From Mytilus edulis (lineage: Eukaryota), in contig NC_092356.1 in the NCBI RefSeq assembly GCF_963676685.1, positions 34,782,001 through 34,846,000 of the forward strand: a DNA stretch of 64,000 nucleotides. The letters are read 5' to 3'. The notes beneath the pieces were generated by a model. That model was given only the letters and a program-made list of their open reading frames with translations. It did no database searches and was not told the DNA's origin. A program made the translations under genes and the position numbers. Positions 17,059-44,444 of this stretch are shown here, piece after piece (position 1 is the first letter of the stretch; each line of letters begins with the position of its first letter).

Positions 17059-18252
17059 ATGGATAATTGTAACATTATCATAATATTTCTATTTATTTTT
17101 TTGCTGAACCATGTTCATGGTCAGACATCGTCACATATGAGACAATTATATACTGATATTTTTACAAGTTACCAACCATCCATTCTTCCAAATTCTGATT
17201 TTTCAGCACCATTACAAATAACACTGTCACCCTATTTGATGACCATTACTCAATTTCAGGAAGTAGAAGAAACTCTGGACGTGGCTTTAGGACTTATATG
17301 CACCTGGGTTGACGATGGATTCTCTTGGACTCCGTCATCATACGGTAATGCGGAATATATTATAGTGCCTCACACAGATGTGTGGACTCCGAAGTTTGTT
17401 CTTGTAAATTCTGTTGAAACATATGAACCTTTAGCAGGAGATAACGATATCTTCGCTACAATTTATTCTAATGGAACTATGTCAATAGTTTATGGCGATG
17501 TTTTGTCATCGAAATGTACAGCAAATATTTACAAGTTTCCATTTGATTCTCAAACATGTGATCTGCAATTTGCCGTCTGGGGAATTACATCAAATGATAT
17601 AACGATAATAGCAAACCCTATTAGCCTAGCGTTCTACACTGAAAATTCAAATTGGGAACTAGATTCCTATAGTACGAAATCTACAGTTATGAACGGATAC
17701 TCTATGCTTATACTTACAATGACGATAAAGCGTGTACCGTTGTACTACGTAATAATGGTAGCTTTGCCAACAGATATGTTCTTTGTATTGAATCCGCTCG
17801 TATTTCTTCTTCCGGTAGAGTCTGGTGAACGCTTAGGACTTGCGATGACAATATTATTATCGTATGCTATATTCCTGACAATGGTCCAAATGTCCATACC
17901 AGCCTCTTCAAATCCAATGAGTGTTTTACTGATTATAATGATAGTGACTATTGTAATAAGCGGTAGCACAGCTGCCGTAACTATTTACATAGCGGCACTT
18001 TATCATAGAGAACCACACGTTAAAATGAACTCTTTTTGGAAGTTCATCGGAACAAGGTTACCATGGAGTAGAAGGCATACACCTGTACGGCCGTTGACTA
18101 AAAATGGTGCAAAGGGGGATATTATATCTTCGTCTATAGAGGAAAGCATAACCTGGCAGGAAGTTTGTCATGCTCTAGATACACTAATGATGGTAATACT
18201 ATATGCCAACATTTTCATTATCAATTGTGCATTTTTGATAGCTGTAGCCTAG
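17059..18252 (+). CDS. Cys-loop ligand-gated ion channel subunit, atypical non-alpha nAChR-like, single-exon CDS (copy 1)
   Basis: Signal peptide ending VHG|Q, VWTP, Cys-loop CTANIYKFPFDSQTC, four TM helices, M2 GERLGLAMTILLS. The ATG at 17059 is preferred over the track's GTG at 17026. Confidence 0.95.
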   Translation: MDNCNIIIIFLFIFLLNHVHGQTSSHMRQLYTDIFTSYQPSILPNSDFSAPLQITLSPYLMTITQFQEVEETLDVALGLICTWVDDGFSWTPSSYGNAEYIIVPHTDVWTPKFVLVNSVETYEPLAGDNDIFATIYSNGTMSIVYGDVLSSKCTANIYKFPFDSQTCDLQFAVWGITSNDITIIANPISLAFYTENSNWELDSYSTKSTVMNGYSMLILTMTIKRVPLYYVIMVALPTDMFFVLNPLVFLLPVESGERLGLAMTILLSYAIFLTMVQMSIPASSNPMSVLLIIMIVTIVISGSTAAVTIYIAALYHREPHVKMNSFWKFIGTRLPWSRRHTPVRPLTKNGAKGDIISSSIEESITWQEVCHALDTLMMVILYANIFIINCAFLIAVA

Positions 18253-19049
18253 TGATATGAAACAGATTGATAAATAAATACTTTGATGTGTGTTATCTAC
18301 ATTGATTACATGTACATTAATTAATATATGAAATCTACACAGCTACGTGTAGCTATGTTATCAGTTATGTTGTAACTATGTTTTTATCTTTACACAAAAT
18401 TTTATTTTTCATTTTGGTATTTCGGTGTTAATCTGAACAGTTGAATGTCGTGTTTTCCATTGTAAGTGGTAATTCTTGATAGATATGTAGTATATCCTGC
18501 TGAATTATAAAGCGTTTCGTTCTAAATGAAAGCACAATATCATTGAATGATGCAGTCAAATTATGTCAGATTTATCATTATATTAAAAACGGTTTCTCTT
18601 TTAAAAACTTGCTAAGATTATTTTAGTTGTTCTATCATGTGTAATATAATAAAAAAAAAGAGCTCAAATTAAAAGAAGAACCAGAGATGAATGCAATCTT
18701 TACAGTCAAATCTCCCATTCTTATTTTAATATACTGCGGTAAAGTTCTCAATTGTTAAAACGTTCGTCGAATATAAACACTTTATTTCTTCTATTTCAAT
18801 AAACCCAACGCTTAAAATGAATTAAATCGATATCAACATATGAATGGAATTTCAGGCCGTCAGCGGCTTATATCATTTACGTGTTAAATCCTTTATAAAT
18901 TGCATATGTACTTATGATTGTTATGTATCAAATTAAGTAGTTATAATGGAGAAAATATATCTAACCTAAGATGACCTTCGATCTTTCTTTTAGAACCATT
19001 TGAAACTTTGGGTTTTTAATTATTTTAAAATTCTTATTTAATTTGACTT

Positions 19050-19120
19050 TTTTAATTGTTTGAATCGAGCATCATTACTAAGTTTTATAAGACGAAACAC
19101 GCATCTTGAGTTCAAAATCT
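19050..19120 (+). repeat. Decayed copy of the hammerhead-bearing repeat
   Basis: gagcatcattactaagttttataagacgaaacacgcatct aligns with the family motif; CUGAUGA is destroyed. Confidence 0.5.
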
Positions 19121-21964: not shown

Positions 21965-22749
21965 GTGTTGTGCCTTTGTCGTTTTTATAATCGCACTTTG
22001 AAGTTATTCTCAAGGTTAGTTAAGTTGATCGGGCAACCTTGGATTATATACTAATAACTTAATCACTCCAATCACGACACCAATAACTGCAAGTTATTAA
22101 CCTCTTATAAAAAGTGACAACAAAGTTTAATCCGCTGGTCATAAATCAGAATATACACATGTACCCTGATATTTGACCTCAGAATGTCAGTAATTGGGCT
22201 AGTTCAGAAAATTACATAAAATATCATTTTGCATGTATAATGACCAATTTAACTATTAGGGTCTAGGGATTTGATTTCAAAACCCCCAATCACGTTCCTG
22301 CGATTACTATTGACGTTCTACATCAAAATTCTTGATTAGTTTGGAATTTTTCCATTCACATTTGACAACCAAGGAATCGCTAGATTTATAATATTTTTAC
22401 TAATTCCACCTTATACATTAACATGTGAATTTCAACAAGCTTTTACGGAAAACTCATGTTAAATCATTAAATATGAGTTTCACGTGAATTTTTTTTTTGA
22501 ATCTGACATGAATTTCACGGGAAAACCATATGAATATTTGTTCAATTGAAATTCACTTGAATTTTGAAAATTAGCATATTCAAATAACATTTAAATTATC
22601 AAACTAAATCAAAATAATCAAAAATACCAATTTTTCCTTTGGTAAAGTTCAGGTGAAAAACAACAGCTCAAACACATCAACAAATAGAAAACGACCGTCA
22701 GATTCCGGACTGGCACATGCATTTCCTTATGTATATAATGATAGATTAA
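21965..22749 (+). repeat. Local direct duplication, copy 1 (partner at 27860-28790)
   Basis: Shared colinear blocks such as TTAACCTCTTATAAAAAGTGA, TCCGCTGGTCATAAATCAGAATATAC, CTGATATTTGACCTC and AGAATGTCAGTAATTGGG. Confidence 0.85.
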
Positions 22750-23989: not shown

Positions 23990-24720
23990 ATTCATAAGCG
24001 ATGGACTAGTTAGCATAGGAACCAATACCAAGCTTGTTACTCATTCGCACCCACCATGGTATATTGCACGTTTTACTTGCTGAAAAAGACTAGACCGAGT
24101 CGTGGGAATAGCCTCAATAACTATTTCCTCTTCCAAAAACACATGCTTTCTTGCATCGTTAACCCCATCTGATAAGTTTGTTCGATCTTAAAACAAAACC
24201 ACGTGTCGTTCTATCAGTGACTTTGTCAAATCCATATCTGGTGATGTTGGTGGATCAATCATCATTCTAAATGATAGAGTCACATCTTTAAACACCATCC
24301 ATGTCACCAACGCAGTTCCTTTTCCAGCAAACGGAAATCTCTCAATGCCTAGTGTATTTGAAAGGTCATGGATAGATATATATCTGAAGCTTTTCCCACT
24401 TCCAAATGCAAGCCACAGTTCGTCTATGTCAATGAAAAGCGAAACAGCAATGACAGCAACATCAGTATCAACTGTTCGAGTCATGACTCAGTTAAGTTTG
24501 TGTTTCACTGCATAAGACACATGCATCTTGATTCAAGTGTCAGCCTCTTCATGTGAACATGGTGCTAAGCTTGAAACATCATCATGTTGTGGATAACACA
24601 GAACATCCTGAGTCATTGTTGCTACAACTACTTTTCCCCCAAAATCTATTGAGCAAGCTGTTGCGATTGAAAATCTAAAAGTTCTTTCTTATTGTCGTCA
24701 TCTCTCAGAAAACTTTGTCA
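23990..24720 (-). pseudogene. Academ XPG-like domain relic
   Basis: LAPCSHEEADT*IKMHV, RTVDTDVAVIAV, ELWLAFGSGKSFRYISIH, LIERHVVLF*DRTN..VNDARK. Confidence 0.75.

Positions 24721-27342: not shown

Positions 27343-27388
<46 letters not shown>
27343..27388. repeat. (TA)n microsatellite
   Basis: Directly visible; similar tracts at about 7414-7432, 28105-28129 and 44827-44849. Confidence 0.9.
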
Positions 27389-29409: not shown

Positions 29410-32400
29410 TACGGAAGCCGATAAGGGCCATTGAAAAAAAATTCATGTCGTAATTACGACATAGCATGTCGTTATAACGACACCACTATGTCGTTATTTC
29501 GACATAACATGTCGTTATTACGATATCGCTATGTCGTAATTTCGATCGTAATTTCGACATAAGATGTCGTAATTACGACATCACTATGTCGAAATAACGA
29601 CATATTATGTCGAAATAACGACACCGCTATGTCGTAATAACGACATATTATGTCGAAATAACGACATCGCTATATCATTATAACAACCTTAGCTTTGTTA
29701 CTTCGTGAGCATTGAAACAATACGAGAAAGAACATTTCCATCTTTATTTTCAGATCAAACTTGATATACGTGTGCGTTATAAGGTCCTATTCAAGTGTTG
29801 TAACTTATGGTTTTAAATTGGATAAAACACATGACAAAGTTTTCAAAATATTCTTCTCAAGAACACTAATTAAAGTGACTGAGTTAAAACTTAGTATAAA
29901 TATACATTGTGTTCCTAGTATCCGATGTCTTTAAAAAGAGATGTTGCGTTTGACATGATCCGAAGTTAAATATGGCCGCCAGTGAGGACAAAGTGTGTAT
30001 CAAAACCCTATTGTAAACATATTCATTTTCTTTTCGAGAATGTTAAACTCTGAATTCAATCAAGCTTGATTGATATTAAAGTTATTCACTTTATATGTCT
30101 ACACATGATAGAACTTTATTTCATAATCAAGTCGAATAGGACCCTTATAAATGGTGATCAATTCAGGCCTCTATTATATTTGGCATGTATGTAGCAAGAA
30201 CATGTGTTTAGTACTCGAGGGATAATGTGTGCCTTTGCAATTGCTTGTCGTCCGTCATCGTCTGTAGTTACCGTTTACTTTTATTTTTATTTTTACTACT
30301 ATTACCTTTACTAAGTATCAGTTTCAATATTGTTCGTTGTCGATCATAATCGACGGACTCAAAGTGATGACAATACATGTAGCTATCCAAAAAAATGGTT
30401 TCGAGGACACAACTCAGAGATGGGTCAAGCTGATCATTCTGAAATTTTCGAAGATCAGGCGATCCATAAGCCTCGAGTATTAGGGTCCAAAATTTAACAT
30501 ACTAGGCTCTAATGAAAAAAGCTTTGAAAATCATCTTCATAAGAACTATCAGGCCATTTTGGACTAATTTTAAAGAATGAAGGATTCTTATATAATGAGG
30601 AGTAAATATAAAAAAGAAGATATGGTATGACGAGACAACTCTTCACAAGAAACCACATGACACAGAAATTAACAATTATAGGTCACCTTACGGCCTTTAA
30701 CAATGATCACAGCCCATACCGCTTAATCAGCTATAAAAGGCCCCGAAAGGACAAATGGTATACAATTTAAACGAGAAAAACTAACGGCCTATTTTATGTA
30801 CAAAAATAAACGAAAAACAAATATGTAGCACATCAACAAACGACAACCACTGAATTAAAGACTTGGGACTGACACATACATAGAGAATATGGCGGGGTTA
30901 AACATGTTAGCGGGATCCAAACTCTCTCCCTATGTGGGTACGAATAGTGTTCCTGGGGTACAGTTGTTAAAAGAACTAGGGGTACAAAGTTTAAATAAGG
31001 CTTCAATGGGGAGGACGCTTGAAGAACCTCATTAAGAACCAACAATAGCAATGCAGTTATAATTTGCATTAAGTCTAAGTAGTACATTAAGATTCAATTG
31101 TATACAAATGAAGGTACAGAGGTCCGTGGGTCTGCGCACTATGACCCCAAAGCTTAAGATATTAGTCTTTATTGGGAAAAGATTAAAATTCATCTTATTC
31201 AGAACCTGCAATGGAATTGGAGGACTTCATAATTTACACTAATCTCTACATGCCAAACATAAGTAAAGGCCCCGCGGAGCTTGAATTTCTCCCCTATTCA
31301 ATTCGGTCTCATTTGACTTCATTACAAAATAAATTTCTTGTATGTGCAAGTCTCGAGGTGCAAGTAAATAACTTTAATTGAGCTTGATTCCATATAGTGT
31401 TCATTATTCTCTCTAAAAAAAGGTGAATTTGTTTACGCTACAAACTTTGCCTTTACTGACGACTATTTTGAATTACCTATCTCTTCAAAAAGTGAAAAGT
31501 TAAACTCTAAGGTTGTCGTTATTATCACATTGCGGCCAAGAGTCCGTAATTCAGTGGTTGTCGTTTGTTGCTGTGTTACATATCTGTTTTTTCGGTCTTT
31601 GTTTGTACATTATTAAAACCGTTACTTTTCTAGTTTGAATTAAAATTGTTAAACATCTGTCATTTCGGGGACTCTCCCTCTGGTATCGTTCGTCCCTCTT
31701 TTATAGCTGACTATGCGGGGGCTGTTCTTATTATTGAAGGCCTTATGATGACCTATAGCTGTTAATTTATGTGTCATTTAGTCTCTTGGCAATAACAAAA
31801 CATATTCTTTTATATACATATATATATGGGTCATTTTCAAAAAATGTCGAATTTTGAAATTGATAAATTTATTAAAAGTTACTTATTCAAACAACCCTCT
31901 AAATAAGCAAATCAAAACAAACAGTACTTTAAGAACACCATATTAAAAGATGCAATCTTAATGATGTCATACAAGAATATCTTGAAACATTTTTTGATCG
32001 GCGGTACAATATTTTGTCTATTCTGTTACCATTTTCAAAAGAAATTTTGCAATTAGATGGTAGTAAGAGTATAAACTTCTATATATATTCATTCTGTAAA
32101 ATAATAGATTATTTGCCAATTTTCCAGGTTGTACTGAAAAATGCCCCTAAAAATTGGTTTTCAAAGGTTGTAAAAATTACCACAAGTAATGCAAGTCTAA
32201 GATAGCAATTTATATTGTTCGGCATTTCTTCACCCTTTCAAACAAACCCAACATCAAGTAAATCCCTCATAAATTAGTTTACTTTTTCTCTTTATTTCAT
32301 TGGTAACAGGAACGTACGTTTCTGATATATCACTTTATAAAAGTCTATCATGTTACCTTTTTGTGTTTCTGTTACTGGTATCAGTATTGCACATGCAAAT

Positions 32401-33449
32401 GATTGATTGGGAAGATTATGACGTTATAACCTTAAGATGAGTTCAAACAACGAAATATTTCATTCCTTTTGCACCTATATGTTAAGATAAAAAATTTAAC
32501 GACGTTTTGTCTATCCTGTAACTGTAACCATAGCAACCATAGTAACAGGATAGACACATTTCTTCGTTTTTGATTGCTGTTGTGAAATAACTACTCCCTT
32601 TGGTGAAGTGATTATGGTTTTCTATTGTGAATTTGGTTTCAAACACGTTATTGCACTTTATACAAGCATACTGTTGGTGTAATTAATCAAACATGTTTGT
32701 AACAGCATAGACATGAAAAAAAGTACACTCTATCTTTTTCGCTAAATGTCTTAAAATTTCTTTTCTCTACACTGTCGTTGAAGAAACAAGGCGTTTTAAA
32801 TGTTAAGATTACTTTGCACTTTTGAAATCAACTCTGACTGATTCAATATTCAGAAAATTTAACGGCTGATTTAAGTAGCGGTAACAGGATAGACATGAAC
32901 CTCCCGTACGCTGATCGAACTTAGTTTGCAGATAATATGTAACATACAATGATAAAGAAGCTACAAGTTTTCGTTAGAGTAATAATTAACGTTCTTAAAA
33001 AATCCCTTTTGCAGATATCAAGGCGATCAGAAAATCGGAAAAGAAATTATTTGAAATGTGTTTTTCTGATATGACACTGTACGCACATAAATACCCCCAA
33101 AATCGGACTTAAATGCAGTTTAATCTCATCAAAATAGATGTCAGTTGTGTTTATTCTTAATGTTCTGAATCACAAATCCGACAAGCTTTCATTTAAACCA
33201 TTAAAACTGAAATTTCAATTAGAAATAAAAAATTTAGCATGAGTGTACTGAAAATTCGACATTTTTTTTAAAATGACCCATATATCGATGTCGTTATTAC
33301 GACAATAGCGATATCGTTATTACGACATATTATGTCAAAATAACGACATAGCGATGTCGTAATAACGACATGTTATGTCGAAATTACAACATGCTATGTC
33401 GTAAGTACGACATACATTTTTTGTTGAATGGCCCTTATCGGCTTCCGTA
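29410..33449. mobile_element. Foldback-like DNA transposon with TAC...GTA termini (IS3EU-like) and tandem palindrome arrays
   Basis: TIR TACGGAAGCCGATAAGGGCCATT at both ends. Arrays of ATGTCGTAATTACGACAT variants at 29445-29670 and 33287-33415. TSD is degenerate (aatc/actc). Confidence 0.8.
31828..33279. mobile_element. Nested non-autonomous DNA transposon (GGG termini, AT or ATAT TSD; ISL2EU- or Sola1-like)
   Basis: ATAT|GGGTCATTTTCAAAAAATGTCGAATTTT ... AAAATTCGACATTTTTTTTAAAATGACCC|ATAT. Internal motif GTCTATCCTGTTAC occurs about six times in both orientations. Confidence 0.8.
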
Positions 33450-34990
33450 ACTCCGATGAATATTCAAAAAGGAAAGTCCCTAATCAAATAACGAAATCTA
33501 AAGTTCAAACACATCAAACGAATGGATGACAACTGTCATATGCCTGACTTGGTACCGGCATTTTCTTATATAGAAAATGATGGATTAAACCTGGTTTTAT
33601 AGCTAGCTAAACCTTTCACTTGTATAAGTCATTGACAGTCGCATCAAATTCCATTATATTGACAACGATGCGTGAACAAAACAAACAGACACTATATATA
33701 AATGCAAAAATAAAGATACAGTAGTCAACATTGTGGTATCATTTTAATTACTATAAAAACAAACAAATGTAACAAAGAAGCACAAAAAGACATACATCAA
33801 ATTTTAAATTCTTCATTTTGCTTTTGTATGAACGATTTTCTTTATCTATGTAAGATCAACCCATAAAGAATTTTAAAAATGTAGGCACCTGCGTAGAATT
33901 TGACTTCACCCAGGTAAATATAGAATAATTTTGTCGTTCAAAGTAAGACGAGATACATTAGAACAGAGTCACGTCAAACGGATATCTCAAAACATAGACT
34001 GAACAGTGAAAGTAATGTAAATAAAATGAAATAATTTTGTAATTTAAAGTACGACGGGATGCATAAGTACAGAGTCACGTCAAATGGATATCAAAAATAG
34101 TGGTTGTCGTTTTTTTATGTGTTGCATATTTTTTTTTCGTATATTTTTTATACTAAAACTATGCCGTTAGTTTTCTCATTTGAATTGTTTTAAATTGTCA
34201 TTTCGGAGCCATTTATAGCTGACTATGCGGTTTGAGCTTTGATCATTGTTGAAGTCCGTACGATGACCTATAGTTGTTATTTTTTTGTCATTTTGGTCTC
34301 ATTTGGGAGAGTTTTCGCATTGACAATCATACCACATCATCTTTTTTTTTATATCAACAGTAAAAGTAATATTAATAAAGACGAATAAAATAATACTATT
34401 ACACCTTATTAAGATAATAAATAATGTCCGTACGCGGAATCTTTACCCCAAGACCATCGTGTATTATTTGTGAGGTTGATACGGAATATTTATCAACAAG
34501 GTTTTGGTATCTTCCCATGAACGTTTATTTTAGAAAAAGGACGAGACACTCTTTTGCATACCCCTGCTTCATACACTTTCTGCTCAGACACAGATGACGT
34601 TTAACAAAGTCTGAGTAGGAGATTCAAGCACTTGAATACTTAATAAGTTGGGAAATGTAAATCCCGTTTGCAGGTGAAGTTTGTGTGTTGCTACTAGGGT
34701 TGGGGAATTGATAATTTCAAAATTAAAATCGTCTCGTTTGTCATAGATTATTGTACTGTGACTGTGCAGGTCAATTTCGATGTATAAGTCTAAGAATAAG
34801 ACCGGAATGCCGTGTCTGTTGTTTCTTTAATTTATAGTTATTGGGGGTATGTTAATGAAATCCAATCAGAAAAGTAACACTTTTTTTTAATTTGGATTTA
34901 CTATGGCTTAAAATTAATATTTATACGACAAACGATAACTTTTAATGTTTTAAAAGCATTTTAAAAAAGAGTTGGTATACAAATAAGAGA
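33450..34990 (-). mobile_element. 3' part of a Penelope-like element whose ORF ends at the RT thumb, with its 3' non-coding tail
   Basis: Minus strand of about 34450-34840: IKETTDT, YDKRDDFNFEIIN, SPANGIYISQLIKYS, SYSDFVKRH..QGY, FMGRYQNLVDKY. Tail copies near 26460-26670 and 44900-45300. Confidence 0.75.
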
Positions 34991-36024
34991 GTGGGGTATG
35001 ATAACTAATGAGACAAAATGACGTGGATTTCAAAATTAAATGTCAGCATACGGTCTTCCACAATGAGCAACGACAAGGCCCACAAATGTTTGATTTTGTT
35101 TAGCGTTATTATTCGTACATACCTGCATCTTTATTACACTAATTTGTTATATGCACAAACATATCTACAGATAAACATACAATGTACATTGATTATTTTA
35201 ATTCCAATATATAAATAAACTCATCATAGATACAAAGATTGAAATTTAGTTTATTCGTCAGACGCACGTTTCGTCTACAAAATATTCATCAAATCAGAAA
35301 GTCATTGTAATTAAACACAACCACCACACTACCAGTATTACGAACCTGCTGGAACAAAATACTGATCAGTACACCCAAAGTGTTTTCGGCACTTCAGTGC
35401 TTCTTTATGAATAATGCCGACTTCAGAAGCATGTTCTTTCATTAAACAAAATATATATGCAAGTACCGTGTCGTTGCGAAAGACGAGTCAATAATTTTGT
35501 TTTACCTCGCATTCATGATATAATTGCATATTGTTTGTTCAATTCAGAGATATATTTTGTTATTGGTGATTGGTTTTTCAAAACATTAGACAACAGTTTG
35601 ATGATTATTATTCATGGGTACCAGTTTAGGTTAGATTCATTACCGATTTTTATGTGTTGTTTATTTGCATCTTGTTTGCCATTTTCGCATTTCAGAGTCA
35701 TTAAACATGGTAGAGCTTACTTATATTATGTAAACTTTTTATTACAGGTTTCTCTCTTCTAAACATTTTAATTACGTTATTAATAAGGTTTATAATGAAA
35801 ATGTTTAACATTAAAATATATATACCAATCGCAAGTTAATCCAAAAAATTATATAACTTAAATCATACATAAAATATATGCAAATAAGCAAACAAGAAAA
35901 GGTCATTTTTCAGGTCATCTTACGTACATATAAATTACAAAGCCAATTATTACCTACTCATTCTGCAAAGAATTGATGTCACTGCTGGTAATACATTAGA
36001 TTATTGCTTGTCGCTTTAATAAGT

Positions 36025-37236
36025 ATGGACGATCAGATAGCAATCAGATATATGTCTTCATGGATTTTATTATGTATATCATTTAACGTTGCTAATGGTC
36101 AGACATCTACTGATATTAACAAATTATATACCGATATATTCACAAGTTATCAAAAGTCAGTTGTACCAAATTCTGATTTTTCTACAGCTTTGAATGTAAA
36201 ATTGAGAATGTATTTGATGACAATATCTCGATTTAATGAAGTGGAAGAAACTTTGGACACTGCGACTGGAATGATAGCTACGTGGACTGATTCTGGATTC
36301 ACTTGGGATCCTTCTTCCTACGGTAATGCAGAATATATCATAGTGCCACATACCGATGTTTGGACACCGAAGTTTGTACTAACAAATTCTGTTGAAACAT
36401 ACGAACCAATAGGAGGGGGTAATGATCTATTTGTAACGATAAATTACAACGGCTCTGTTTCTATTGCTTATGGCGATGTCATGTCATCCAAATGTACAGC
36501 GAATGTATACAAGTTTCCTTTTGATTCTCAAACATGTTATCTTAACTTTGTTGTATGGGGGATTGCAGCAAGTGACATAAACTTGATAGCAGATTCTATC
36601 CCGGTTGATCTATCCTTCTATACACCAAACTCTGACTGGTCACTAGAATCATATAAAGGTGAAACTTTACTTTGGAATGGATATTCTAATTTTAAAATGA
36701 CTTTTACAATAAAACGTGCACCTTTATATTACAATATAGTAGTTGCTTGTCCTACCCTTTTGTTTAGTATACTGAATCCACTGGTATTTCTACTTTCGGT
36801 AGATTCTGGAGACCGAATAGGATTATCAACGACAATTTTACTATCATATGCAATATTTCTGACCATGGTCCAAATGGCTGTTCCGGCATCCTCTAATCCT
36901 ATGAGTCTTTTATTAGTCATGATGATAGTAACTATAACAGTCAGTGGCATATGTGTTGGTGTTACGATCTATATATCATCACTTTATCATAGAGATCCTG
37001 AATCAAAAATGAACAAAGTTTACAAATTCATTGGATCAAAGACACCATGGAGACAAAGATTATCAGCTATTCGACCAGCGTCCTATGATATAGAAATAGT
37101 ACACGTGAAATCCGCGACAGAGGTAACCATTACCTGGAAAGATGTTTGCGATGGGCTTGATAAATACATGATGTGGCTCTCATACTTGATGGTTTTTATT
37201 GTTAACGTAACATACTTCATTGTTTCTTCAGTGTGA
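36025..37236 (+). CDS. Cys-loop ligand-gated ion channel subunit, atypical nAChR-like, single-exon CDS (copy 2)
   Basis: Signal peptide ending ANG|Q, Cys-loop CTANVYKFPFDSQTC, M2 GDRIGLSTTILLS, four TM helices, uninterrupted ORF. Confidence 0.95.
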   Translation: MDDQIAIRYMSSWILLCISFNVANGQTSTDINKLYTDIFTSYQKSVVPNSDFSTALNVKLRMYLMTISRFNEVEETLDTATGMIATWTDSGFTWDPSSYGNAEYIIVPHTDVWTPKFVLTNSVETYEPIGGGNDLFVTINYNGSVSIAYGDVMSSKCTANVYKFPFDSQTCYLNFVVWGIAASDINLIADSIPVDLSFYTPNSDWSLESYKGETLLWNGYSNFKMTFTIKRAPLYYNIVVACPTLLFSILNPLVFLLSVDSGDRIGLSTTILLSYAIFLTMVQMAVPASSNPMSLLLVMMIVTITVSGICVGVTIYISSLYHRDPESKMNKVYKFIGSKTPWRQRLSAIRPASYDIEIVHVKSATEVTITWKDVCDGLDKYMMWLSYLMVFIVNVTYFIVSSV

Positions 37237-37940
37237 ATATTAACGATAAACATATGATATCATTTGTATTTAAATATCATGACTTGTTTGTACAAACCAA
37301 TAATCGAAGACACATTGAAAATGACATTGTGTTCCGGTGTCGAAGTTATCGTAATCTTTGATCTGATGTTGTGTTGTTGCAGATGTAACGCACTTCAACA
37401 CATGTTACTCTTACATTTACTATTTATTCTCATCGCATGTCAAATTAAAGGACTTTTATTCAGGCAATTGGTTGTCGTTAAATACTTTCAGTTATAATTA
37501 TTTTTCGTTCATCGTTATAGCGCAGAGAAGAAAAAGTTAGATTTATTATTTACAATGTTTTAAATTCAGGGACCTTTATAGCTTACTTTGCGGTAAGAGT
37601 TGTGCTTGAATCTACATTTATTTATATCACCATTCTTTGTACTCATTAGTGAACGTATGTTAGTATCAATTATACCATATTTACATAATTGAATTATAAT
37701 AGAAGGTACATTTCCAAATTATTAAATATCAATAAGCGATAAATCGATATAACTGCTGGTTTATTTCTGTTTTTAAGGTAATGGGTGTATTTTTTTTGGG
37801 CTCTAGTGTTGTCTCCTTATGTTTAACCTGATTTCCGATTGAATTCTTAAATATCTCCTGTCTCCTATATACATTTTAACCTACGACATGTTGATGAATT
37901 CTTATTCACACAGATGCATTTACATAGAATAAGGTATTAA

Positions 37941-38462
37941 ATAAAACTGGAAATCAACATCAAGTTTAGAAAATCTGCATTACTTCTTGCATTCAATTTC
38001 GTGATGTAAGTTAGATTATTTTTTAATTTGAAGTATCTAACATTTTTTTTCTTCTTAGTGTTTTTTTTCAAATTCAACCTATTTATTTTGCCTGAAAGAC
38101 ATATCGTGCATTATAATTTACCGTAATATATAAATTGATATGACTCAACCATATCATGTTATGTAAACATGAAAGCATGGACGAAGTTAACGTTAATTGC
38201 CCTCGTCCATATATGCATGGACAAAGTCTGTTGTGTTACTCCATGCAAGCCTGGACTAAGTTAACATTAGTTGCATTCGTTCATGCATGCATTGACTAAG
38301 TTTGTTGTGTAAGTACAAAGTTAACGTTAGTGGCCTTTGTCCATGCATGCCTGGAAAGCTTATTTCCCAAGTTCTCATGTTTACATCTTTTCTTATATCA
38401 TGAAATTAAGCGGTAGGAAGAAATGGAAGTTTTCTAAACTTGATGTTGATTTCCAGTTTTAT
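37941..38462. mobile_element. MITE-like element with 33-bp perfect inverted repeats and internal GCATGGACAAAGT-type tandem units
   Basis: ATAAAACTGGAAATCAACATCAAGTTTAGAAAA and its exact reverse complement; imperfect pairing continues inward. True termini and TSD are unclear. Confidence 0.7.
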
Positions 38463-39239
38463 GTATTACTTCTTATAGATACCTTTATACAACGTGCATA
38501 GTCAATCATTTCAGTTCAACAATAACATATAACCATGGTTATCAACACCACCACCTAATATGCAAACCCGTGTTTTATTTCGGAGTGTTGTAAAAAAGAG
38601 AATAAGACCAATACAGTAAATAATTTATGAAATTACAACTGCAATGATACGAAACTATAAAATTACAAAAATTTAATGTATATTTAAATCACTTTTCAAG
38701 AAGGGACAATCAAGCCAAACAAGTATAAAGATGAAAAACATTGAAAACCCAAAACTTCCAAAAAGTTGGGTCAAATACGGCTAAGGTAATCTATGCCTGG
38801 GAGTATTTTGAATAATTTATACCTTACAAACAGTATGATATTCATGTCATCACCGAAGTGCTGACAAACTACATTATAACAAATCAAAAACAAAAAACAG
38901 CGGTCAACTTAAAATCAACAATAAGCGCGACGAAAAACAAGCATTAAGCATTGGGAACTACATTACACTCTACGATGAACATTTGATTGGACAAAAGAAA
39001 CCGTAAAATAAAATACGGAAAAAAAAGTTTAAACTTTATTTTAATTGCTATATCATAAAGCCGGTGATCAGTGCGAAATTGATAGTTGATTGATAACTCT
39101 GAAGTAACAAACGTTTGCGTATATCTGATATTAAGATGATTACATGTAACAAATGTAATTTGAAAATAAAATATACAGCTGCAGCATATTGTGAACATTA
39201 CACCTTCATAACCTTAAACTATAATTTTTTTTAATTTTT

Positions 39240-39890
39240 TTTGCTTATTGAGAGATGTTTCACTGGCAATCATACCACATCTTTATTTTATATATATTGC
39301 AGGATTTGCTATCGTGCTGCGTGGGTGCAGTATAACGTGTCCCCGTGAGTGTAGTGTATGCCTTTATATTTCTTTTACAGTAAGGGTTTTTGTGCTTGTT
39401 AGAGAGATGTCTACATATTCAATTATCTTTTTGTGGAAAGTTGTCTCATTTGTAATCTTACCACATCTTCTTTTTATAATTACTGCAGGATTTAATACTC
39501 TTCTTGTGTTGACGAGTATAATGTATCCCCGTGCGCTTGTAGTGTATGCCCTTATATTTTTACAGCACGATTTTTTGCTTGTAAAACAACTGTCTACATG
39601 TACATGTTCAATATCTCTTTGTTGAAAGTTCTCATTGTCATCCACACCACATTTCCTTTTTTATTACTTTACTGCATGGTTTGTTACTCGTGCTGTGTTA
39701 ATGTAGTTTACTCGTTCCCCGTGCATATTGTGTATGCCCTAATATTTTTACTGCTAGGTAGGATTTGTTTTTACATTTGAAACAGCTGTCTATATATTTG
39801 AATCATTAATCTCTTGTGGAGAGTTGCTTTTCCATCTTATCGGGTATGGCCCTATATTTTTAAAGTTATGTTGTTTTGCTTGTGAGAGAG
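39240..39890. repeat. Degenerate tandem repeat, three to four copies of ~180 bp
   Basis: Recurring ccacat(c)tt...tgcagga...tccccgtg...gtgtatgcc blocks. Confidence 0.75.
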
Positions 39891-42800
39891 GAAAGAATGA
39901 AAAAAAACATTCAACATGCTAATTAAACACAAAACTTACCAAAGAGGGATACATTAAGCTATACGAACCCCTACAGTTCGACATCCCTCCACAAAAAATG
40001 CGCCCAAAACACAACGTAGCGGGATTAAACGTTTAAATGGTACCAAACCTTCTCTCTTTTCTTAAACAATAGTATTACATCACAACATTGAAAAACAAAC
40101 TATAAAATATCAATTGGAAGGCTTAACTCAATCAAAGTACGGATATTAGCACACAATGAACCAACAAATTTGATCTGTAAGACCTGTATGATACCACTGT
40201 CAAATGTTAAATATAATAATATTAAAAAAAATCATCACTATTGAAAGAACCTGCGTATATTATACACAGGTAAATTAAAATAATTTGGTTGTAAAGTATA
40301 CGTCATCGTCTGTGTGTATCAAATCATCGTCTAGCAATACCAAGAAATTTCTATAATTATATTAATCTGTTACAGATCTTGAGATGTATAGTTAATCTAA
40401 GCGTTCTCAGTTCATCATTCGTTGATTCTGCACAATAGATGGATGACGAAAACTTGGAGTTACATTTTAAAAGAAAATAAAGATACAGTATCAATATATT
40501 TCGTGAATAAATTTGTTCCGAAAGAACAAAACATAGTTATAACTGTCTCTCTACTTTTCACCTTTTTATTCTTTTTTTTTTCACCTATTATTATTGTTTT
40601 TTAATTCATCAACGTGGAGTTCGTTTGATCCCAGTTTGCTCTTGGTTTTGATTCGATTATGACGTCAATTGTTCCTGTGTCACTATGAAAAAGGCGACCA
40701 TGTCTGATGATGTCACATAGAAAGAACCCATTCCGAAGGCAGATCATTTTAAAAACTGGCAGACAAGTCCTTGAAAACAACCGTTGTCGTCAAGCTCTAT
40801 CAACAACAAGAGCAGAGGGAATTAATTAAGTCGTGCATCAGTTGTAAATAACACACAAACGTCTGTAAAATTAATCGGTTAAAAAATCGACGTTGAAACT
40901 ATTTTGTCATGCTTTTTTATTATTGATTTTTTAACTAAACTTTGTAGAATGTGTCAACAATATAATTTCAAAACGACATTGACACATTGCCTAAACTATC
41001 TATTATTTGATATTGCTTTATCTTGTCCGTTCTAAAATCATCAGCAATCTTTTGTGTTTTGCCAAAGCTATGTGAAGCCCATCATGCTTTACTCTAATAC
41101 AACAATTTGAGTGACCACCAGTCATGTCAGTTTGTAGCTGTTTTTGACAGATTTTCTAGTTTGTAACTGTGAATGTACAGCTTCTTTTCATTGTACCCTT
41201 TTCCAAAAAACTCTTACATACTGATTTTAGTAGAGATATGAAGAAATTGTAACTAAAAATTGTTGTTTTTCACAAATGAATGTTACCTCCATTACAAATT
41301 GACCAAAACCCTTAGGCTACACAAATTAACAGTGACATGGTTTTCTTTTTTCAACAGACGTCATATAACGTTAAAAAAATATGTGTCAGAGGCATGAGTT
41401 CAGTGAAAATGTACACATAAAAAAAGAGAAACAAAAACTATCTTTATAAAATTGTGTTTGAAACTTTACGTCTTAGAAAAGTTTCTTCCTACTGGAATAA
41501 AAATCTGACAAATCAATAAATAGACAAAAACACATAATAAGCAAAAGAGATGTCTTTCAAATTTCTGGGTGGAAAATAAACATTTGAAGGTCAGTAATTA
41601 TAAAATTCAAAAAGGGGTATGCCCAGTAAGATCCCTTTTTGTACCCAAAATACAGCAGTTTTACAAAATTGTTAAAATGAAAACTATGTGCTATTTATTT
41701 GGAACTAGAATACTTCTGTTCCACAAATATGGGCTGTTTTTTACAATACAATGCACATGTTCGGGTACTAGTATAATCAAGTTATGCTAAATTACTGAAA
41801 TCGTAACAATTTTAGTACTTCAGGTAATATTACGATCACCCCCAGTTTTTTGGTTGGGTTTCTGTTCCTAAGTCTTTTGTTTTCTATGTTTTGTCTTCTG
41901 TTCTATCATTTATCTTGGTATTTTTAGCCATAGCGTCATGCGCGTTGTCAGTTTACTTTCAATCTATGAGTTTGACTGTCCCTCTGTTATCTTTCGTCCC
42001 TCTTTTCCGTATAAAACAGAAGTGGCTGCATTTATGTTCATTATTGATATTAAAATGTAAATTGTATGTTATTGTAATCCATAACGTATATAAGCTGAGA
42101 CTGAACTTGAATGCGACAGCTTTCATTTTTCACAGAAACCATATGAGAAGTGACATCTTATGGCATATTTGGTAGATTCTGAGCGTCTTTTTTTACTAAA
42201 TCAGTTCAGATCTTTCAGATTCACCAATTGAAGTAGACATGTAAGTTTTTAAAAAGTGTCCAAATTCCGTCATCAGATGAATTTGAAGTTTGAGAAAATC
42301 GGTATATGTTTACAGACTTTTTTTCAAAATCTATGGTAAACATATCCTTTTTCTGAAGGATTGTTTTCTAGGCAGCATTGTACTGCTCAACTAAGAAAGA
42401 CATGATAGACCAACAAGTTTGTTGTACTTAGAAAAAACTAATGTAACTTATTTTTTGGAAATATAAAATTGAAATGATCAGTTATAATTACTATTTTTAT
42501 TTCAGAAAGATAAGTGAAATTATATAAAGTATGTTTTATTGCTTTAAACAGTGTTAGAAATAATTAAGCAAAATTTCTAATTGGAGTGATTGCACATCCA
42601 ATTACAAAAATAGCATAGTAAATTTCATCACCAAGAGCTTATTTATATCAAAACTACAGAAGGTTTCTGGGTTACATTTCTCATTTTTTCTATAATTTAT
42701 TCATTTTTTGTCTTCTTATTTTGACCGCTTATCCTGGCATTCTCTGTATGTTTAATGATTATGGTGCAAGTGTACCTGTTACGATGTAATGTATTGTCCA

Positions 42801-43232
42801 TTTCCATGGCGTTTGAATGTCCCTCTTTCATGTGTATTTTTGAATAGTGTTAGGCGTAATTTATATTTATTTCAGTATCTATGTTATACCATGCTAAAAG
42901 TTATTGTCCTTGTCATGTATTCTGATTACAAAATGTTTCTCTATTCAAACATGGTGTACCAACATTTTCATACAGGTATATGCATAAGTTTTAATGTCAT
43001 TGTCTTACTTTGTATATGATTAATCGCATATATAAACAAAATTGACCTAATCTTAATCATGTATTAAGTAGCTGTGATTACGAAACAAATAAAATTCATT
43101 TTTTCAAAATACTGTTAGTAGATACAGATTTAAATGTAACCTGTGCATACTACCAACACATTTCACAGGCCATTATTTTCACTGCTGGAAAACATTAGTT
43201 GTTTCGGATTGTTGATTCAAGCTTTGATAATA

Positions 43233-44444
43233 ATGGCTGAAGGTTTAGCATTCAGATGTATGCCTCGATTGATTTTAACATGTTTATTTTTTTACATTGT
43301 TAATGGTCAGACGTACACTGATATGAACACTTTATATACCGATATCTTCACAAGTCATCAAAAATCATTTCTTCCAAATGCTGATTTTTCAACAGCTCTG
43401 AATGTAACATTGAAATTGTATTTGGTGGCAATTGTTCGATTTGATGAAGTGGACGAAACTGTGGACGTTTCGACTGGAATACAACTTACATGGGCTGATG
43501 CCGGAATTAGTTGGAATCCTTCTTCGTATGGTAATGCTGAATTTATCATAGTGCGTCACACCGATGTTTGGACACCGAAGATTGTTTTAGTAAATTCCGT
43601 TGAAACATACGAATCAATCGGAAAAGGTTATGATGTATTTGTAACAATTTATTACAATGGCACTGTTGTCATTGCTAACGGCGATGTTATATCTGCAAAA
43701 TGTACAGCAAATGTCTACAAGTTTCCATTTGATTCTCAAACATGTGATCTGAATTTTGTTGTATGGGGAATTTCAGCAACTAACATAAACTTGATAGCAG
43801 ATTCTAACCCGGTTGACCTATCTTTCTACAGACCAAACTCTGATTGGTCGTTGGAATCATCTACAGGTGAAACTATAATTTGGAATGGATATTCTAATTT
43901 TAAAATGACTTTTACAGTAAAACGAGCACCTTTATATTACAGCATGGTAGTTGCTTGTCCTACTCTCTTGTTTAGTGTACTGAATCCACTGGTGTTTCTA
44001 CTTCCGATAGATTCTGGGGACCGAATAGGATTATCAACGACAATTTTACTATCATATGCAATATTTCTGACCATGATCCGATTGGCTGTCCCGGTCACCT
44101 CTAATCCAATGAGTCTTTTATTAGTCATGATGATAGTGACTATAATCTACAGTGGAATCATTGTTGCCGTAACTATTTATACATCCTCACTTTATCATAG
44201 AGATCCAAAACCAAAAATGAACAAAGTTTTTAAATTCTTTGGATCGAAGATACCATGGAGAAAGAGATTATTAGCCATACGACCAATGTCTAAGGATAAC
44301 GAAATAGTAGTTGTAAAATCTGACGCAGAGATAACCATTACCTGGAAGGATGCATGCAATGGACTAAATAAATACATGATGATTTTTTCATATTTCGTCG
44401 TTTTCATTGTTAACGTGGCATATTTCATTGCTTCTTCTGTGTGA
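43233..44444 (+). CDS. Cys-loop ligand-gated ion channel subunit, atypical nAChR-like, single-exon CDS (copy 3)
   Basis: Signal peptide ending VNG|Q, Cys-loop CTANVYKFPFDSQTC, M2 GDRIGLSTTILLS. Closest to copy 2. Confidence 0.95.
   Translation: MAEGLAFRCMPRLILTCLFFYIVNGQTYTDMNTLYTDIFTSHQKSFLPNADFSTALNVTLKLYLVAIVRFDEVDETVDVSTGIQLTWADAGISWNPSSYGNAEFIIVRHTDVWTPKIVLVNSVETYESIGKGYDVFVTIYYNGTVVIANGDVISAKCTANVYKFPFDSQTCDLNFVVWGISATNINLIADSNPVDLSFYRPNSDWSLESSTGETIIWNGYSNFKMTFTVKRAPLYYSMVVACPTLLFSVLNPLVFLLPIDSGDRIGLSTTILLSYAIFLTMIRLAVPVTSNPMSLLLVMMIVTIIYSGIIVAVTIYTSSLYHRDPKPKMNKVFKFFGSKIPWRKRLLAIRPMSKDNEIVVVKSDAEITITWKDACNGLNKYMMIFSYFVVFIVNVAYFIASSV

What the first reader, a model, noticed from the sequence alone, without database searches (positions are those of the whole stretch)
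17059..44444. Tandem array of single-exon nAChR-derived channels lacking the acetylcholine pocket: candidate bivalve chemosensory receptor family
Seen: three intact same-strand ORFs of about 400 aa persist among otherwise ruined transposon ORFs, which suggests purifying selection. By eye against nAChR consensus, loop A Tyr is V/T/V (LVNS, LTNS), loop D Trp is Gly, and loop C is shortened with no YxCC (VMNGYS, LWNGYS, IWNGYS). Only the loop B Trp (VWG) and the last loop C Tyr remain. The M3-M4 loop is short. Established: bivalves have large retro- and tandem-expanded nAChR families, and cephalopod chemotactile receptors are clustered nAChR derivatives that lost these residues and sense other chemicals. 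Inference: this could be a parallel, uncharacterised sensory channel system.
Basis: partly seen in the sequence, partly recalled or inferred. Interest (0 to 1): 0.78.

Follow-up and report, generated by a model that had tools for sequence, protein, structure and literature searches.

The report
Mussel orphan nicotinic-like channel gene array
Three intact single-exon mussel genes encode nicotinic-receptor-like ion channel subunits that have lost the acetylcholine-binding residues; they belong to a large, already published bivalve gene expansion whose real ligands are still unknown.

Summary
Three same-strand single-exon ORFs (A 17059-18252, B 36025-37236, C 43233-44444; 397/403/403 aa) encode complete Cys-loop receptor subunits (Pfam LBD E 6e-35 to 1.5e-37). 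Alignments to solved nAChRs show loop A Tyr replaced by Val/Thr, a loop C 6-7 residues shorter with no vicinal Cys, and loop B Trp and the last loop C Tyr kept. Loop D Trp is Gly in A and B against alpha7; for C this rests on my family alignment. The Cys-loop, pore 9' Leu and acidic -1' residue are intact.

The genes are not isolated. The genome (most likely Mytilus edulis) holds at least 103 such loci. Of 91 intact ORFs, 0 have the vicinal Cys or the loop A Tyr.

Gene B is transcribed as an unspliced RNA of about 1.6 kb in one run and undetected in two others. Purifying selection is moderate (dN/dS 0.17-0.37). Pocket positions evolve about twice as fast as the rest of the domain.

All three proteins are already in NCBI, and the expansion and a ligand-broadening idea are in print (PMC6896357, PMC13174522). 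A chemosensory role is neither shown nor excluded. The scan noted a similar cluster elsewhere in this genome (s1-839837).

The parts
17059..18252 (+). Gene A: single-exon CDS of 397 aa plus stop, a Cys-loop (nAChR-like) non-alpha subunit
   Evidence: The ORF is. Pfam LBD E 6.1e-35 and transmembrane region E 1.8e-09. The alpha7 alignment shows V at loop A Tyr, G at loop D Trp, loop B Trp kept and loop C shortened. The exact 397-aa protein is in NCBI/UniRef. Orthologues are 92-93% identical in M. trossulus, M. coruscus and M. californianus.
36025..37236 (+). Gene B: single-exon CDS of 403 aa plus stop, same family
   Evidence: The exact protein is in NCBI/UniRef. Its M. galloprovincialis orthologue P0131 is 97.5% identical.
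35976..37569 (+). Transcribed span seen for gene B: 49 nt of 5' UTR, the whole CDS and 333 nt of 3' UTR, with no intron. The strand is assumed from the ORF, since contigs do not show it.
   Evidence: eight overlapping contigs of run X1 tile 35976-37569, at word depth 124-160 over 35976-36929 and 18-42 over 36900-37569. Depth is 0 in the unique flanks 35401-35800 and 37601-38600. Raw RNA runs X16 and X19 gave 0 reads here.
35929..35935 (+). TATA-like heptamer upstream of the first transcribed base seen for gene B (inferred promoter element)
   Evidence: Read directly from the sequence. It ends 41 nt before the start of the X1 contig at 35976. This is an inference only.
43233..44444 (+). Gene C: single-exon CDS of 403 aa plus stop, sister of B
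   Evidence: B-C identity is 74% and they are sisters with SH-aLRT 100. The exact protein is in NCBI/UniRef. Expression was not tested.

Best explanation
A, B and C are functional subunit genes of orphan pentameric cation channels. They belong to a mussel-lineage expansion of intronless, tandemly duplicated nAChR-like genes.

Shown:
- The genes are complete: signal peptide, ligand-binding domain with the Cys-loop, M1-M4, a short intracellular loop.
- The gating and pore signatures are kept: the Cys-loop F-P-F-D motif, the pre-M1 Arg, an acidic residue at -1' and Leu at 9'.
- They are under purifying selection, and at least B is transcribed without splicing.
- They cannot build the canonical acetylcholine site on either face of the subunit.

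Inferred:
- They assemble into cation-permeable pentamers.
- These are opened at a remodelled orthosteric pocket by a ligand other than acetylcholine. The pocket keeps the loop B Trp and a clade-specific short loop C tip (W-N-G/Q-Y-S).
- Pocket residues diversify among paralogues, so the family as a whole covers many ligands.

The physiological role (environmental or chemical sensing, immune or stress signalling, or development) is open.
For: Domain architecture: Pfam LBD and transmembrane region in all three. The best solved relatives are nAChR alpha7 or Torpedo alpha, E 1.8e-38 to 2.9e-40.

Pocket losses are read from those alignments (for C's loop D, from the family alignment).

Family survey (one search found 103 scored matches of 374 candidates; fetched 100 loci; 88 of them plus the 3 window genes have ORFs of at least 340 aa):
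- 91 of 91 keep both Cys-loop cysteines, the 9' Leu and an acidic -1' residue.
- 0 of 91 have a vicinal Cys in loop C and 0 of 91 have Tyr at the loop A position.
- 79 of 91 keep the loop B Trp.

Selection:
- Pairwise dN/dS is 0.37 for B-C (dS 0.40), 0.23 for A-B and 0.34 for A-C. M1-M3 is lowest, at 0.13-0.27.
- The X1 transcript allele differs from the reference at 12 synonymous and 7 non-synonymous listed sites, giving pN/pS about 0.17.
- Orthologues are retained in M. trossulus, M. galloprovincialis, M. coruscus and M. californianus.

Expression of B.

Pocket variation:
- Among the 91 paralogues, 19 pocket positions have mean entropy 3.13 bits against 2.20 for the other 179 extracellular positions (Mann-Whitney p 4e-6). 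The M1-M2 loop plus the pore helix M2 is lowest at 1.18.
- In 7 independent paralogue pairs, pocket pN/pS is 0.83 (71 N: 27 S) against 0.39 (384: 282) for the rest of the domain, Fisher p 0.006.
- 12 of the 18 genes of the clade keep W-N-G/Q-Y-S at the loop C tip despite overall identity down to 45%. This argues that this part of the pocket is still in use.
Against: - No ligand, current or assembly was tested.
- A pocket pN/pS of 0.83 is below 1. It fits simple relaxation of an unused pocket as well as diversification.
- The choice of pocket positions rests on my recall of alpha7 contact residues, mapped through the alignment.
- Expression is shown for B only, in one run whose RNA nature is the tool's guess. 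I support that guess only by the zero depth of unique flanks.
- Two raw RNA runs show no reads on B. A and C were not tested.
- The reference allele of B carries Ser at a nearly invariant Pro (residue 258) and Tyr where A, C and the transcript allele have Asp (residue 172). This particular allele may therefore be impaired.
Confidence: 0.55

Rival explanations
1. The array is part of a bivalve peripheral chemosensory or environment-sensing receptor repertoire that arose in parallel with cephalopod chemotactile receptors. On this view, homomeric or heteromeric channels sit in exposed epithelia (gill, mantle edge, palps, foot or larval organs) and are opened by external chemicals.
For: The family has the genomic habits of chemoreceptor families:
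- It is large: at least 103 loci.
- It lies in tandem arrays, some with very young copies (dS 0.02-0.03 among L002-L004).
- Some copies are broken or truncated: 12 of 100 fetched loci have a longest ORF under 340 aa, and 7 of 103 matches contain stops.
- dN/dS of 0.2-0.4 is moderate rather than strict, and one young pair is near 1 in the extracellular domain (L007-L008).
- Pocket positions are hypervariable.
- B is present in one run and absent in two.

Features shared with CRs: single exon, clustering, about 400 aa with a short intracellular loop (CRT1 chains are 379 and 410 aa), and loss of the ACh residues.

Literature: oyster and other bivalve nAChR-like genes are most highly expressed in gill (PMC6896357, Results read).
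Against: - No tissue information could be obtained, because runs are coded.
- Similarity to octopus CRT1 (107-112 bits) is lower than to alpha7 or Torpedo alpha (128-142 bits) for all three proteins. CRT1 is also not among the best 60 hits of the family profile. Any resemblance would therefore be convergent.
- No site with dN/dS above 1 was demonstrated.
- The same genomic habits fit immune or stress-related families, which are also expanded in bivalves (PMC6896357 Discussion).
Confidence: 0.25
2. They are accessory (structural) subunits. They take non-binding positions in heteropentamers whose acetylcholine sites are formed by other, canonical alpha and complementary subunits. They tune conductance, desensitisation or trafficking, and their own pocket is unused.
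For: - They lack both principal-face and complementary-face residues, as non-binding subunits may.
- Pocket pN/pS of 0.83 is close to neutral, while the transmembrane core is constrained at 0.24. That is what an unused pocket would show.
- Automatic names in NCBI treat them as acetylcholine receptor subunits.
Against: - 0 of 91 intact family members surveyed has alpha-type features. More than 90 accessory subunits would then depend on a much smaller set of partners.
- The loop C tip is conserved in 12 of 18 clade members, and the loop B Trp in 79 of 91. This suggests the pocket is not free to drift entirely.
- Every hit that carries an organism name is from Mytilus. Such lineage-specific turnover is unusual for fixed partners of conserved synaptic receptors.
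Confidence: 0.2
3. They are channels gated by something other than a small molecule in the orthosteric pocket, for example ions such as zinc or protons. This would resemble the zinc-activated channel and the bacterial pentameric channels. They could also be constitutively leaky channels.
For: - The canonical pocket is dismantled while the gating interface and pore are kept.
- Precedents for non-transmitter gating exist in the superfamily: the zinc-activated channel paper PMC11536092 (search listing and abstract start only) and the proton-related bacterial channel mentioned in the PMC6896357 Discussion.
Against: - There is no positive evidence from the sequence.
- The conserved loop B Trp and loop C tip are easier to explain by a pocket ligand.
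Confidence: 0.1
4. They are young duplicated retrocopies drifting towards pseudogenes, with open frames kept by chance and no function.
For: - Some family members are broken.
- Intron-poor bivalve copies are more often unexpressed than intron-rich ones (PMC6896357 Results).
- The reference allele of B has two odd substitutions at conserved positions.
Against: - Three frames of about 400 codons are open in DNA of 30-35% G+C.
- dN/dS is well below 1 at dS 0.4-1.3.
- Intact orthologues exist in four other Mytilus species.
- B is transcribed, and the transcript allele differs from the reference mostly at synonymous sites (12 against 7).
Confidence: 0.04

Closest known systems
Bivalve/lophotrochozoan intronless, tandemly arrayed nAChR expansion (Jiao et al. 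2019, PMC6896357)
   Same: - The genes are single-exon and lie in a same-strand tandem array. The array has 7 family loci over about 104 kb, counting the four upstream of the window.
- Duplication is lineage-specific.
- The ligand-binding domain is divergent and the channel core is kept.
- The paper reports 99-217 nAChR genes in five bivalves, 33-55% of them intronless in oyster and pearl oyster, and 55-65% in arrays. It proposes that ligand-binding-domain diversity broadened ligand specificity.
   Different: - Its five bivalves (oyster, pearl oyster, scallop and two mussels) include no Mytilus.
- In the parts I read it does not state that a whole clade lacks every alpha feature. Here that is 0 of 91 with a vicinal Cys or loop A Tyr.
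- Its supplementary figures on binding residues could not be opened.
Cephalopod chemotactile receptors (CRT1; PDB 8eis, 9e6b)
   Same: - They are nAChR-derived and about 400 aa long with a short intracellular loop.
- They have lost the acetylcholine-coordinating residues.
- They are cation channels, and their binding pocket evolves fast. In CRs the pocket residues Y58, W122, F124 and F192 are under positive selection (bioRxiv 10.1101/2025.03.03.641191, passages read).
- That CRs are intronless with a retroposition origin is stated in PMC13174522.
   Different: - Similarity is lower than to alpha7 or Torpedo alpha: 107-112 against 128-142 bits.
- No sensory-cell expression or hydrophobic-ligand gating is known for the mussel genes.
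- Selection above neutrality was not shown (pocket pN/pS 0.83).
Alpo4, an orphan nAChR-like receptor of the annelid Alvinella pompejana (PMC10338036)
   Same: - It is a lophotrochozoan nAChR-like subunit without the vicinal Cys.
- It does not respond to acetylcholine or serotonin, and its ligand is still unknown after screening.
- The authors link it to the same expansion and to CRs (passages read).
   Different: - Alpo4 keeps the aromatic residues of loops A-D: F103, W159, Y199, Y205 and W65. The mussel genes keep only the loop B Trp and the last loop C Tyr.
- Alpo4 is an isolated lineage and not part of a large tandem family.
Vertebrate alpha7 nAChR (best solved match for A and B)
   Same: Same fold family, Cys-loop, pre-M1 and M2 signatures, and the cation-type G-E/D-K/R motif at the pore entrance.
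   Different: Differences read off the and 60 alignments:
- Three of the five aromatic-box residues and the Cys-Cys pair are missing.
- Loop C is 6 residues shorter.
- The intracellular loop is about 50 residues instead of well over 100.

Recalled, not from a call: alpha7 genes have many introns, whereas these genes have none.

Membership tests
Cys-loop pentameric ligand-gated ion channel, nAChR-type cation branch | Extracellular ligand-binding domain plus the transmembrane region of the family | tested here: met
   PF02931 E 6.1e-35 to 1.5e-37 and PF02932 E 1.8e-09 to 1.5e-12 in all three, above the curated cut-offs.
Cys-loop pentameric ligand-gated ion channel, nAChR-type cation branch | Two Cys-loop cysteines separated by 13 residues, enclosing the F-P-F-D motif | tested here: met
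   C157 and C171 of B are invariant in 111 homologues and in 91 of 91 paralogues.
Cys-loop pentameric ligand-gated ion channel, nAChR-type cation branch | Cation-type pore: acidic -1' residue, no Pro-Ala-Arg motif, Leu at 9' | tested here: met
   The motif is S-G-D/E-R in A, B and C. Across the family, 91 of 91 have E or D at -1' and L at 9'. The positions were read from the alpha7 alignment. Ion selectivity itself was not measured.
Acetylcholine-binding alpha subunit | Vicinal Cys-Cys at the tip of loop C | tested here: not met
   Absent in A, B and C and in 0 of 91 paralogues.
Acetylcholine-binding alpha subunit | Principal-face aromatic residues (loop A Tyr, loop B Trp, two loop C Tyr) | tested here: not met
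   Loop A Tyr is V/T/V. The first loop C Tyr falls in the deletion. Only the loop B Trp and the last loop C Tyr remain.
Acetylcholine-binding complementary (non-alpha) subunit | Loop D Trp on the complementary face | tested here: not met
   It is Gly in A and B in the alpha7 alignments. C has Gly at the same column of the family alignment. Only 10 of 91 paralogues have Trp there, and none of them is in this clade.
Bivalve intronless tandem nAChR expansion (PMC6896357) | Uninterrupted coding sequence | tested here: met
   The ORFs are full-length. The X1 contigs tile B without a gap from 35976 to 37569.
Bivalve intronless tandem nAChR expansion (PMC6896357) | Tandem, lineage-specific duplication | tested here: met
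   Seven same-strand loci lie at C13:34.72-34.83 Mb. B and C are sisters, and the 11-gene clade has SH-aLRT 100. Every hit with an organism name is from Mytilus.
Cephalopod chemotactile receptors | Placement inside the CR (or CR-like) clade in a phylogeny | not tested
   No CR sequence could be obtained as a stored protein. As a substitute I compared bit scores: CRT1 gives 107-112 bits against 128-142 for alpha7 or Torpedo alpha. This is a hint against, not a test.
Cephalopod chemotactile receptors | Single exon, clustered, ACh residues lost | tested here: met
Cephalopod chemotactile receptors | Positive (diversifying) selection on pocket residues | tested here: inconclusive
   Pocket pN/pS is 0.83 against 0.39 for the rest of the domain (Fisher p 0.006). 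It is raised but not above 1. Site models could not be run.
Cephalopod chemotactile receptors | Expression in peripheral sensory cells and gating by poorly soluble external ligands | not testable with these tools
   Sample and tissue names are coded.

The most novel reading that the evidence does not exclude
The Mytilus family of at least about 100 intronless nAChR-like genes has no alpha features and a fast-evolving pocket, and this array is one part of it. It could be a bivalve ionotropic chemoreceptor repertoire that arose independently of cephalopod chemotactile receptors. It would then be used by gill, mantle or larval epithelia to read waterborne or surface chemicals such as settlement cues, microbial metabolites or algal toxins.
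Probability: 0.25. Interest if true: 0.75.

Novelty: new member of a known kind. Interest (0 to 1): 0.35.

Why it matters
Bivalves have no described chemoreceptor repertoire. A 2024 paper says as much and calls chemotactile receptors cephalopod-only (PMC11682238, abstract start and passages read). Larval settlement, feeding choice and toxin avoidance in mussels matter ecologically and commercially.

If even part of this family senses external chemicals, it would be a second independent conversion of nicotinic receptors into sensory channels, and it would give a concrete gene list to test.

As it stands, the finding adds detail to a known expansion:
- In this genome the surveyed clade has lost the alpha signature completely (0 of 91).
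- It keeps pore and gating signatures (91 of 91).
- Its pocket evolves about twice as fast as the rest of the domain.
- One array member is demonstrably transcribed.

Tried and rejected

I used paralogue pairs, the transcript allele of run X1 and protein-level orthologue identities instead.

I did not reconstruct ancestors by any other means. I counted differences only between 7 phylogenetically independent pairs of living sequences.

PDB bit scores served as a weak substitute.

5. Between-species divergence from DNA run X13: its contigs cover the flanks at about 5x but leave a hole over 35607-37124, which is nearly the whole CDS of B. No substitutions could be counted, and the hole is unexplained.

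6. Tissue of expression: run, sample and organism names are coded, so no tissue could be named.

7. ESM Atlas look-up: it returned only generic Neur_chan clusters and added nothing.

8. Upstream alignment of the three genes: only weak shared motifs between B and C, and no clear common promoter.

9. Direct-repeat search: similarity among the three units is confined to the coding sequences.

10. Papers PMC7605239 and PMC11055638 are not held. What I say of the original CR papers comes from passages in other papers.

11. Supplements were closed and not requested. The Jiao 2019 supplementary figures on binding residues and expression tables, and the MolluscaGenes clade lists, could bear on novelty.

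12. The claim that no functional study of bivalve nAChR-like sensory receptors is in print rests only on the searches.

Full report
**What is there.** Between 15000 and 46000 the window has exactly three ORFs of at least 200 aa. All are on the + strand, with first ATGs at 17059 (A, 397 aa), 36025 (B, 403 aa) and 43233 (C, 403 aa). In the whole 64 kb, 17 ORFs reach 120 aa and only these three exceed 230 aa. The DNA is 28-37% G+C, so frames of 400 codons do not stay open by chance.
- All three match Pfam Neur_chan_LBD (E 6.1e-35, 1.5e-37, 4.3e-37) and Neur_chan_memb (E 1.8e-09, 1.5e-12, 3.1e-12).
- tblastn of the three proteins against the window finds these three loci and no degraded copy. The window has no N. 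Identities are A-B 61%, A-C 55-56% and B-C 74%.
- DNA similarity among the three units is confined to the coding sequences.

**The residues.** I compared each protein with solved receptors by HMMER.
- B against human alpha7 (E 1.8e-38): Gly lies under the loop D Trp, Thr under the loop A Tyr and Trp under the loop B Trp. There is a 6-residue gap where alpha7 has the first loop C Tyr and the Cys-Cys pair. Tyr lies under the last loop C Tyr.
- A against alpha7 (E 3.8e-36): the same pattern, with Val at loop A.
- C against Torpedo alpha, its best match (E 2.9e-40): Val at loop A, Trp at loop B, a loop C shorter by 7 residues with no Cys-Cys, and the last Tyr kept. Torpedo alpha has no Trp at the loop D position, so C's Gly there rests on my family alignment.
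- The names and numbers of the alpha7 contact residues are from my own knowledge. The alignments are tool output.
- The Cys-loop cysteines, the F-P-F-D motif, the pre-M1 Arg, an acidic -1' residue in an S-G-D/E-R motif and the 9' Leu are present.
- The alpha7 alignment ends at B residue 332, just after M3. The hydrophobic M4 occupies about the last 30 residues.

**Whose genome, and is it annotated.** The window is C13:34782001-34846000 of an assembly whose contig 13 has 75,045,669 bases. Proteins named '[Mytilus edulis]' come from a contig of exactly that length, so the genome is most likely Mytilus edulis.
- The exact sequences of A, B and C are already in NCBI and UniRef.
- Their 90% clusters hold orthologues from M. 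trossulus, M. galloprovincialis, M. coruscus and M. californianus. The M. galloprovincialis orthologues have consecutive accessions VDI04976, VDI04977 and VDI04978, so the A, B, C order is kept there. All carry automatic names such as 'acetylcholine receptor subunit alpha-like'.
- A is 92-93% identical to its orthologues in M. trossulus, M. coruscus and M. californianus. B is 97.5% identical to its M. galloprovincialis orthologue.
- In the word search with B, 151 proteins passed E 1e-20 among 1886 candidates. Of the 120 listed, every one that carries an organism name is from Mytilus.

**The family in this genome.** A six-frame search of the assembly with B gave 103 scored matches out of 374 first-look candidates. 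This is a lower bound. Nearly all are uninterrupted frames of about 400 aa, and 7 of the 103 contain stops.
Four more same-strand loci lie upstream of the window at C13:34722445, 34727420, 34745708 and 34760126. The last covers only residues 104-402 of B. That makes seven loci over about 104 kb.
- I fetched the other 100 loci and took the longest ORF of each. Twelve are under 340 aa.
- The 88 intact ones plus A, B and C were aligned. Of 91, all keep both Cys-loop cysteines, the 9' Leu and an acidic -1' residue.
- None has a vicinal Cys in loop C, and none has Tyr at the loop A column. Seventy-nine keep the loop B Trp, 10 have Trp at loop D, and 27 have Tyr at the last loop C position.
- Alignment of loop C is uncertain for the most distant members.

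A, B and C are therefore typical members of a large clade that has lost the alpha signature altogether.

**The family tree.** In a maximum-likelihood tree of the 91 (quick search, LG+G4), B and C are sisters (SH-aLRT 100). A, B and C sit in an 11-gene clade (100). Their partners are one gene at C13:45.5 Mb, five at C13:68.6 Mb and two at C10:59.2 Mb. An 18-gene clade (99) adds the upstream array genes and their close relatives on C10.

**Selection.**
- Pairwise Nei-Gojobori estimates give dN/dS of 0.37 for B-C (dS 0.40), 0.23 for A-B (dS 1.27, near saturation) and 0.34 for A-C.
- The M1-M3 block is lowest (0.13-0.27) and the intracellular loop highest (0.36-0.47).
- One young pair elsewhere, L007-L008, is near 1 in the extracellular domain (17.2 non-synonymous against 4.8 synonymous differences).
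- Among the 91 paralogues, 19 positions that I mapped from alpha7 contact residues have mean entropy 3.13 bits, against 2.20 for the other 179 extracellular positions (Mann-Whitney p 4e-6). The M1-M2 loop plus the pore helix M2 is the most conserved part, at 1.18.
- In seven phylogenetically independent pairs of the 18-gene clade, the pocket positions give pN/pS 0.83 (71: 27). The rest of the extracellular domain gives 0.39 (384: 282), Fisher p 0.006, and M1-M3 gives 0.24.

This result cuts both ways. A pocket evolving at nearly the neutral rate fits diversification of ligand specificity, and it fits an unused pocket equally well. Against a fully unused pocket, 12 of the 18 clade members keep W-N-G/Q-Y-S at the loop C tip at overall identities down to 45%.

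**Expression.** The run search with 35800-44600 listed nine small 'RNA?' contig sets holding 8-14% of the words, six larger holders, and nine unindexed raw RNA runs. I laid X1, X16, X19 and X13 on 34601-40600.
- In X1, eight overlapping contigs tile 35976-37569 without a gap. That span is 49 nt before the ATG, the whole CDS and 333 nt after the stop. Word depth is 124-160 over 35976-36929 and 18-42 over 36900-37569.
- X1 has depth 0 over the unique flanks 35401-35800 and 37601-38600. The DNA-like run X13 does cover 37601-38600, at about 5-60x. Outside the gene, X1 touches only short stretches that are also very deep in X13, which are repeats.
- I read this as an unspliced mRNA of at least 1.6 kb from gene B. 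The tool labels X1's RNA nature a guess, and contigs give no strand.
- A TATA-like heptamer at 35929-35935 ends 41 nt before the contig start. That it is a promoter element is an inference.
- The raw RNA runs X16 (8.7 million records read, about 6% of the run) and X19 (12.7 million, about 18%) have no read on 35801-37400.
- B is therefore expressed in some samples and not detectably in others. Tissues are unknown because names are coded.
- The 14% share of X1 is roughly what B plus the repeats account for, so there is no sign that C is in X1. A and C were not tested.
- The X1 allele differs from the reference at 19 listed CDS positions, 12 synonymous and 7 non-synonymous. With 204 synonymous and 699 non-synonymous sites, pN/pS is about 0.17. 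Four further differences near contig ends are counted in table 8 but not listed, so they were not classified.

**What it most likely is.** These are expressed, selectively maintained subunits of orphan pentameric cation channels from a mussel-lineage expansion of intronless nAChR-like genes.
- Shown: the architecture, the intact gating and pore signatures, the loss of the canonical site on both faces, constraint, and transcription of B.
- Inferred: assembly into pentamers, cation permeability, and opening by a non-acetylcholine ligand at the remodelled pocket.
- (d) is nearly excluded by the selection and expression data. The other three cannot be separated without tissue data and physiology.

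**Comparison with what is known.** Jiao et al. 2019 (PMC6896357; Results parts 1-2 and Discussion read) described this kind of expansion.
- They report 99-217 nAChR genes in five bivalves, many of them intronless (33% in oyster, 55% in pearl oyster) and 55-65% in tandem arrays.
- They report divergent ligand-binding domains and highest expression in gill.
- They suggest that ligand-binding-domain diversity broadened ligand specificity and helps sessile bivalves monitor the environment.

Other papers bear on the comparison:
- The MolluscaGenes preprint (PMC13174522, passages read) resolves 15 molluscan nAChR clades. It reports clades with substitutions at agonist-coordinating positions and a CR-like clade extending to bivalves. 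It explicitly raises an ionotropic chemosensory contribution and calls for electrophysiology.
- Alpo4 of an annelid (PMC10338036, passages read) is a solved orphan of the same expansion that does not respond to acetylcholine.
- Octopus CRs have a hydrophobic pocket under positive selection (bioRxiv 10.1101/2025.03.03.641191, passages read; review PMC11526382, passages read).
- By sequence, the mussel proteins are nearer to alpha7 or Torpedo alpha (128-142 bits) than to CRT1 (107-112 bits). A profile of 111 family members has alpha7 on top (E 5.4e-68) and no CR chain among its best 60. Any likeness to CRs would thus be convergent.
- My five literature searches found no functional study of a bivalve member.
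- A 2024 paper on bivalve tentacles states that CRs are known only from cephalopods, and its abstract says that no sensory gene repertoire has been characterised in bivalves (PMC11682238).

**Verdict.** The kind is known and the genes are already annotated, so this is a new member of a known kind.
- The chemosensory reading remains an attractive, published but untested hypothesis. I put it at about 0.25.
- Another first-stage note (s1-839837) flagged a similar cluster elsewhere in this genome. My genome-wide survey is consistent with it, but I did not examine that cluster specifically.

Noticed in passing
window 36796 (B codon 258) and 36538 (B codon 172): The reference allele of gene B has Ser at a Pro that is nearly invariant in 111 homologues. 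It has Tyr where A and C have Asp. The transcript allele in run X1 has the common residue at both positions, and the M. galloprovincialis orthologue has Pro at 258. The assembled allele may be a slightly impaired variant.
   Followed up: partly
window 35607-37124: DNA-like run X13 (coded organism D) covers the flanks of gene B at about 5x. It has no contig over almost the whole coding sequence at 95% likeness. This could be chance at low depth, a very divergent allele, or presence/absence variation of the gene.
   Followed up: no
window 38601-39000, 40001-40200, 34601-34800, 39201-39400: These are short high-copy repeats, with word depth of thousands in X13. They are also covered by the raw RNA runs X16 and X19. 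Reads show a 33-37 nt skip at 38798-38836 and run on into unlike sequence, so they come from other copies.
   Followed up: no
G000 C13:34.72-34.83 Mb and C10:59.14-59.22 Mb (L007-L015): Two arrays on different chromosomes have parallel membership, each including a 5'-truncated copy (L015, L014). L013 on C13 differs from L010 and L011 on C10 by dS of only about 0.20. This suggests a fairly recent inter-chromosomal segmental duplication or exchange.
   Followed up: partly
L007 and L008 (G000 C10:59168591-59169763 and 59218275-59219447): This young paralogue pair has dN/dS near 1 overall (0.99) and 1.1 in the extracellular domain (17.2 non-synonymous against 4.8 synonymous differences). It has only 1 non-synonymous change in M1-M3.
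   Followed up: no
window 29448-29686 and 33314-33411: A tandem, internally palindromic repeat of about 43-98 nt built on TCGTAATTACGACAT-like units.
   Followed up: no
window 47505-49927 and 57444-58790: Broken retroelement ORFs lie here: DUF1758 putative peptidase (E 9.8e-05), Pao retrotransposon peptidase (E 4.9e-10), and the integrase zinc-binding and core domains (E 2.3e-11, 1.3e-03).
   Followed up: partly
window 35976-35999: The first base of the B transcript contig starts a 7-codon upstream ORF (ATG ... TAG), out of frame with the main ATG at 36025.
   Followed up: no
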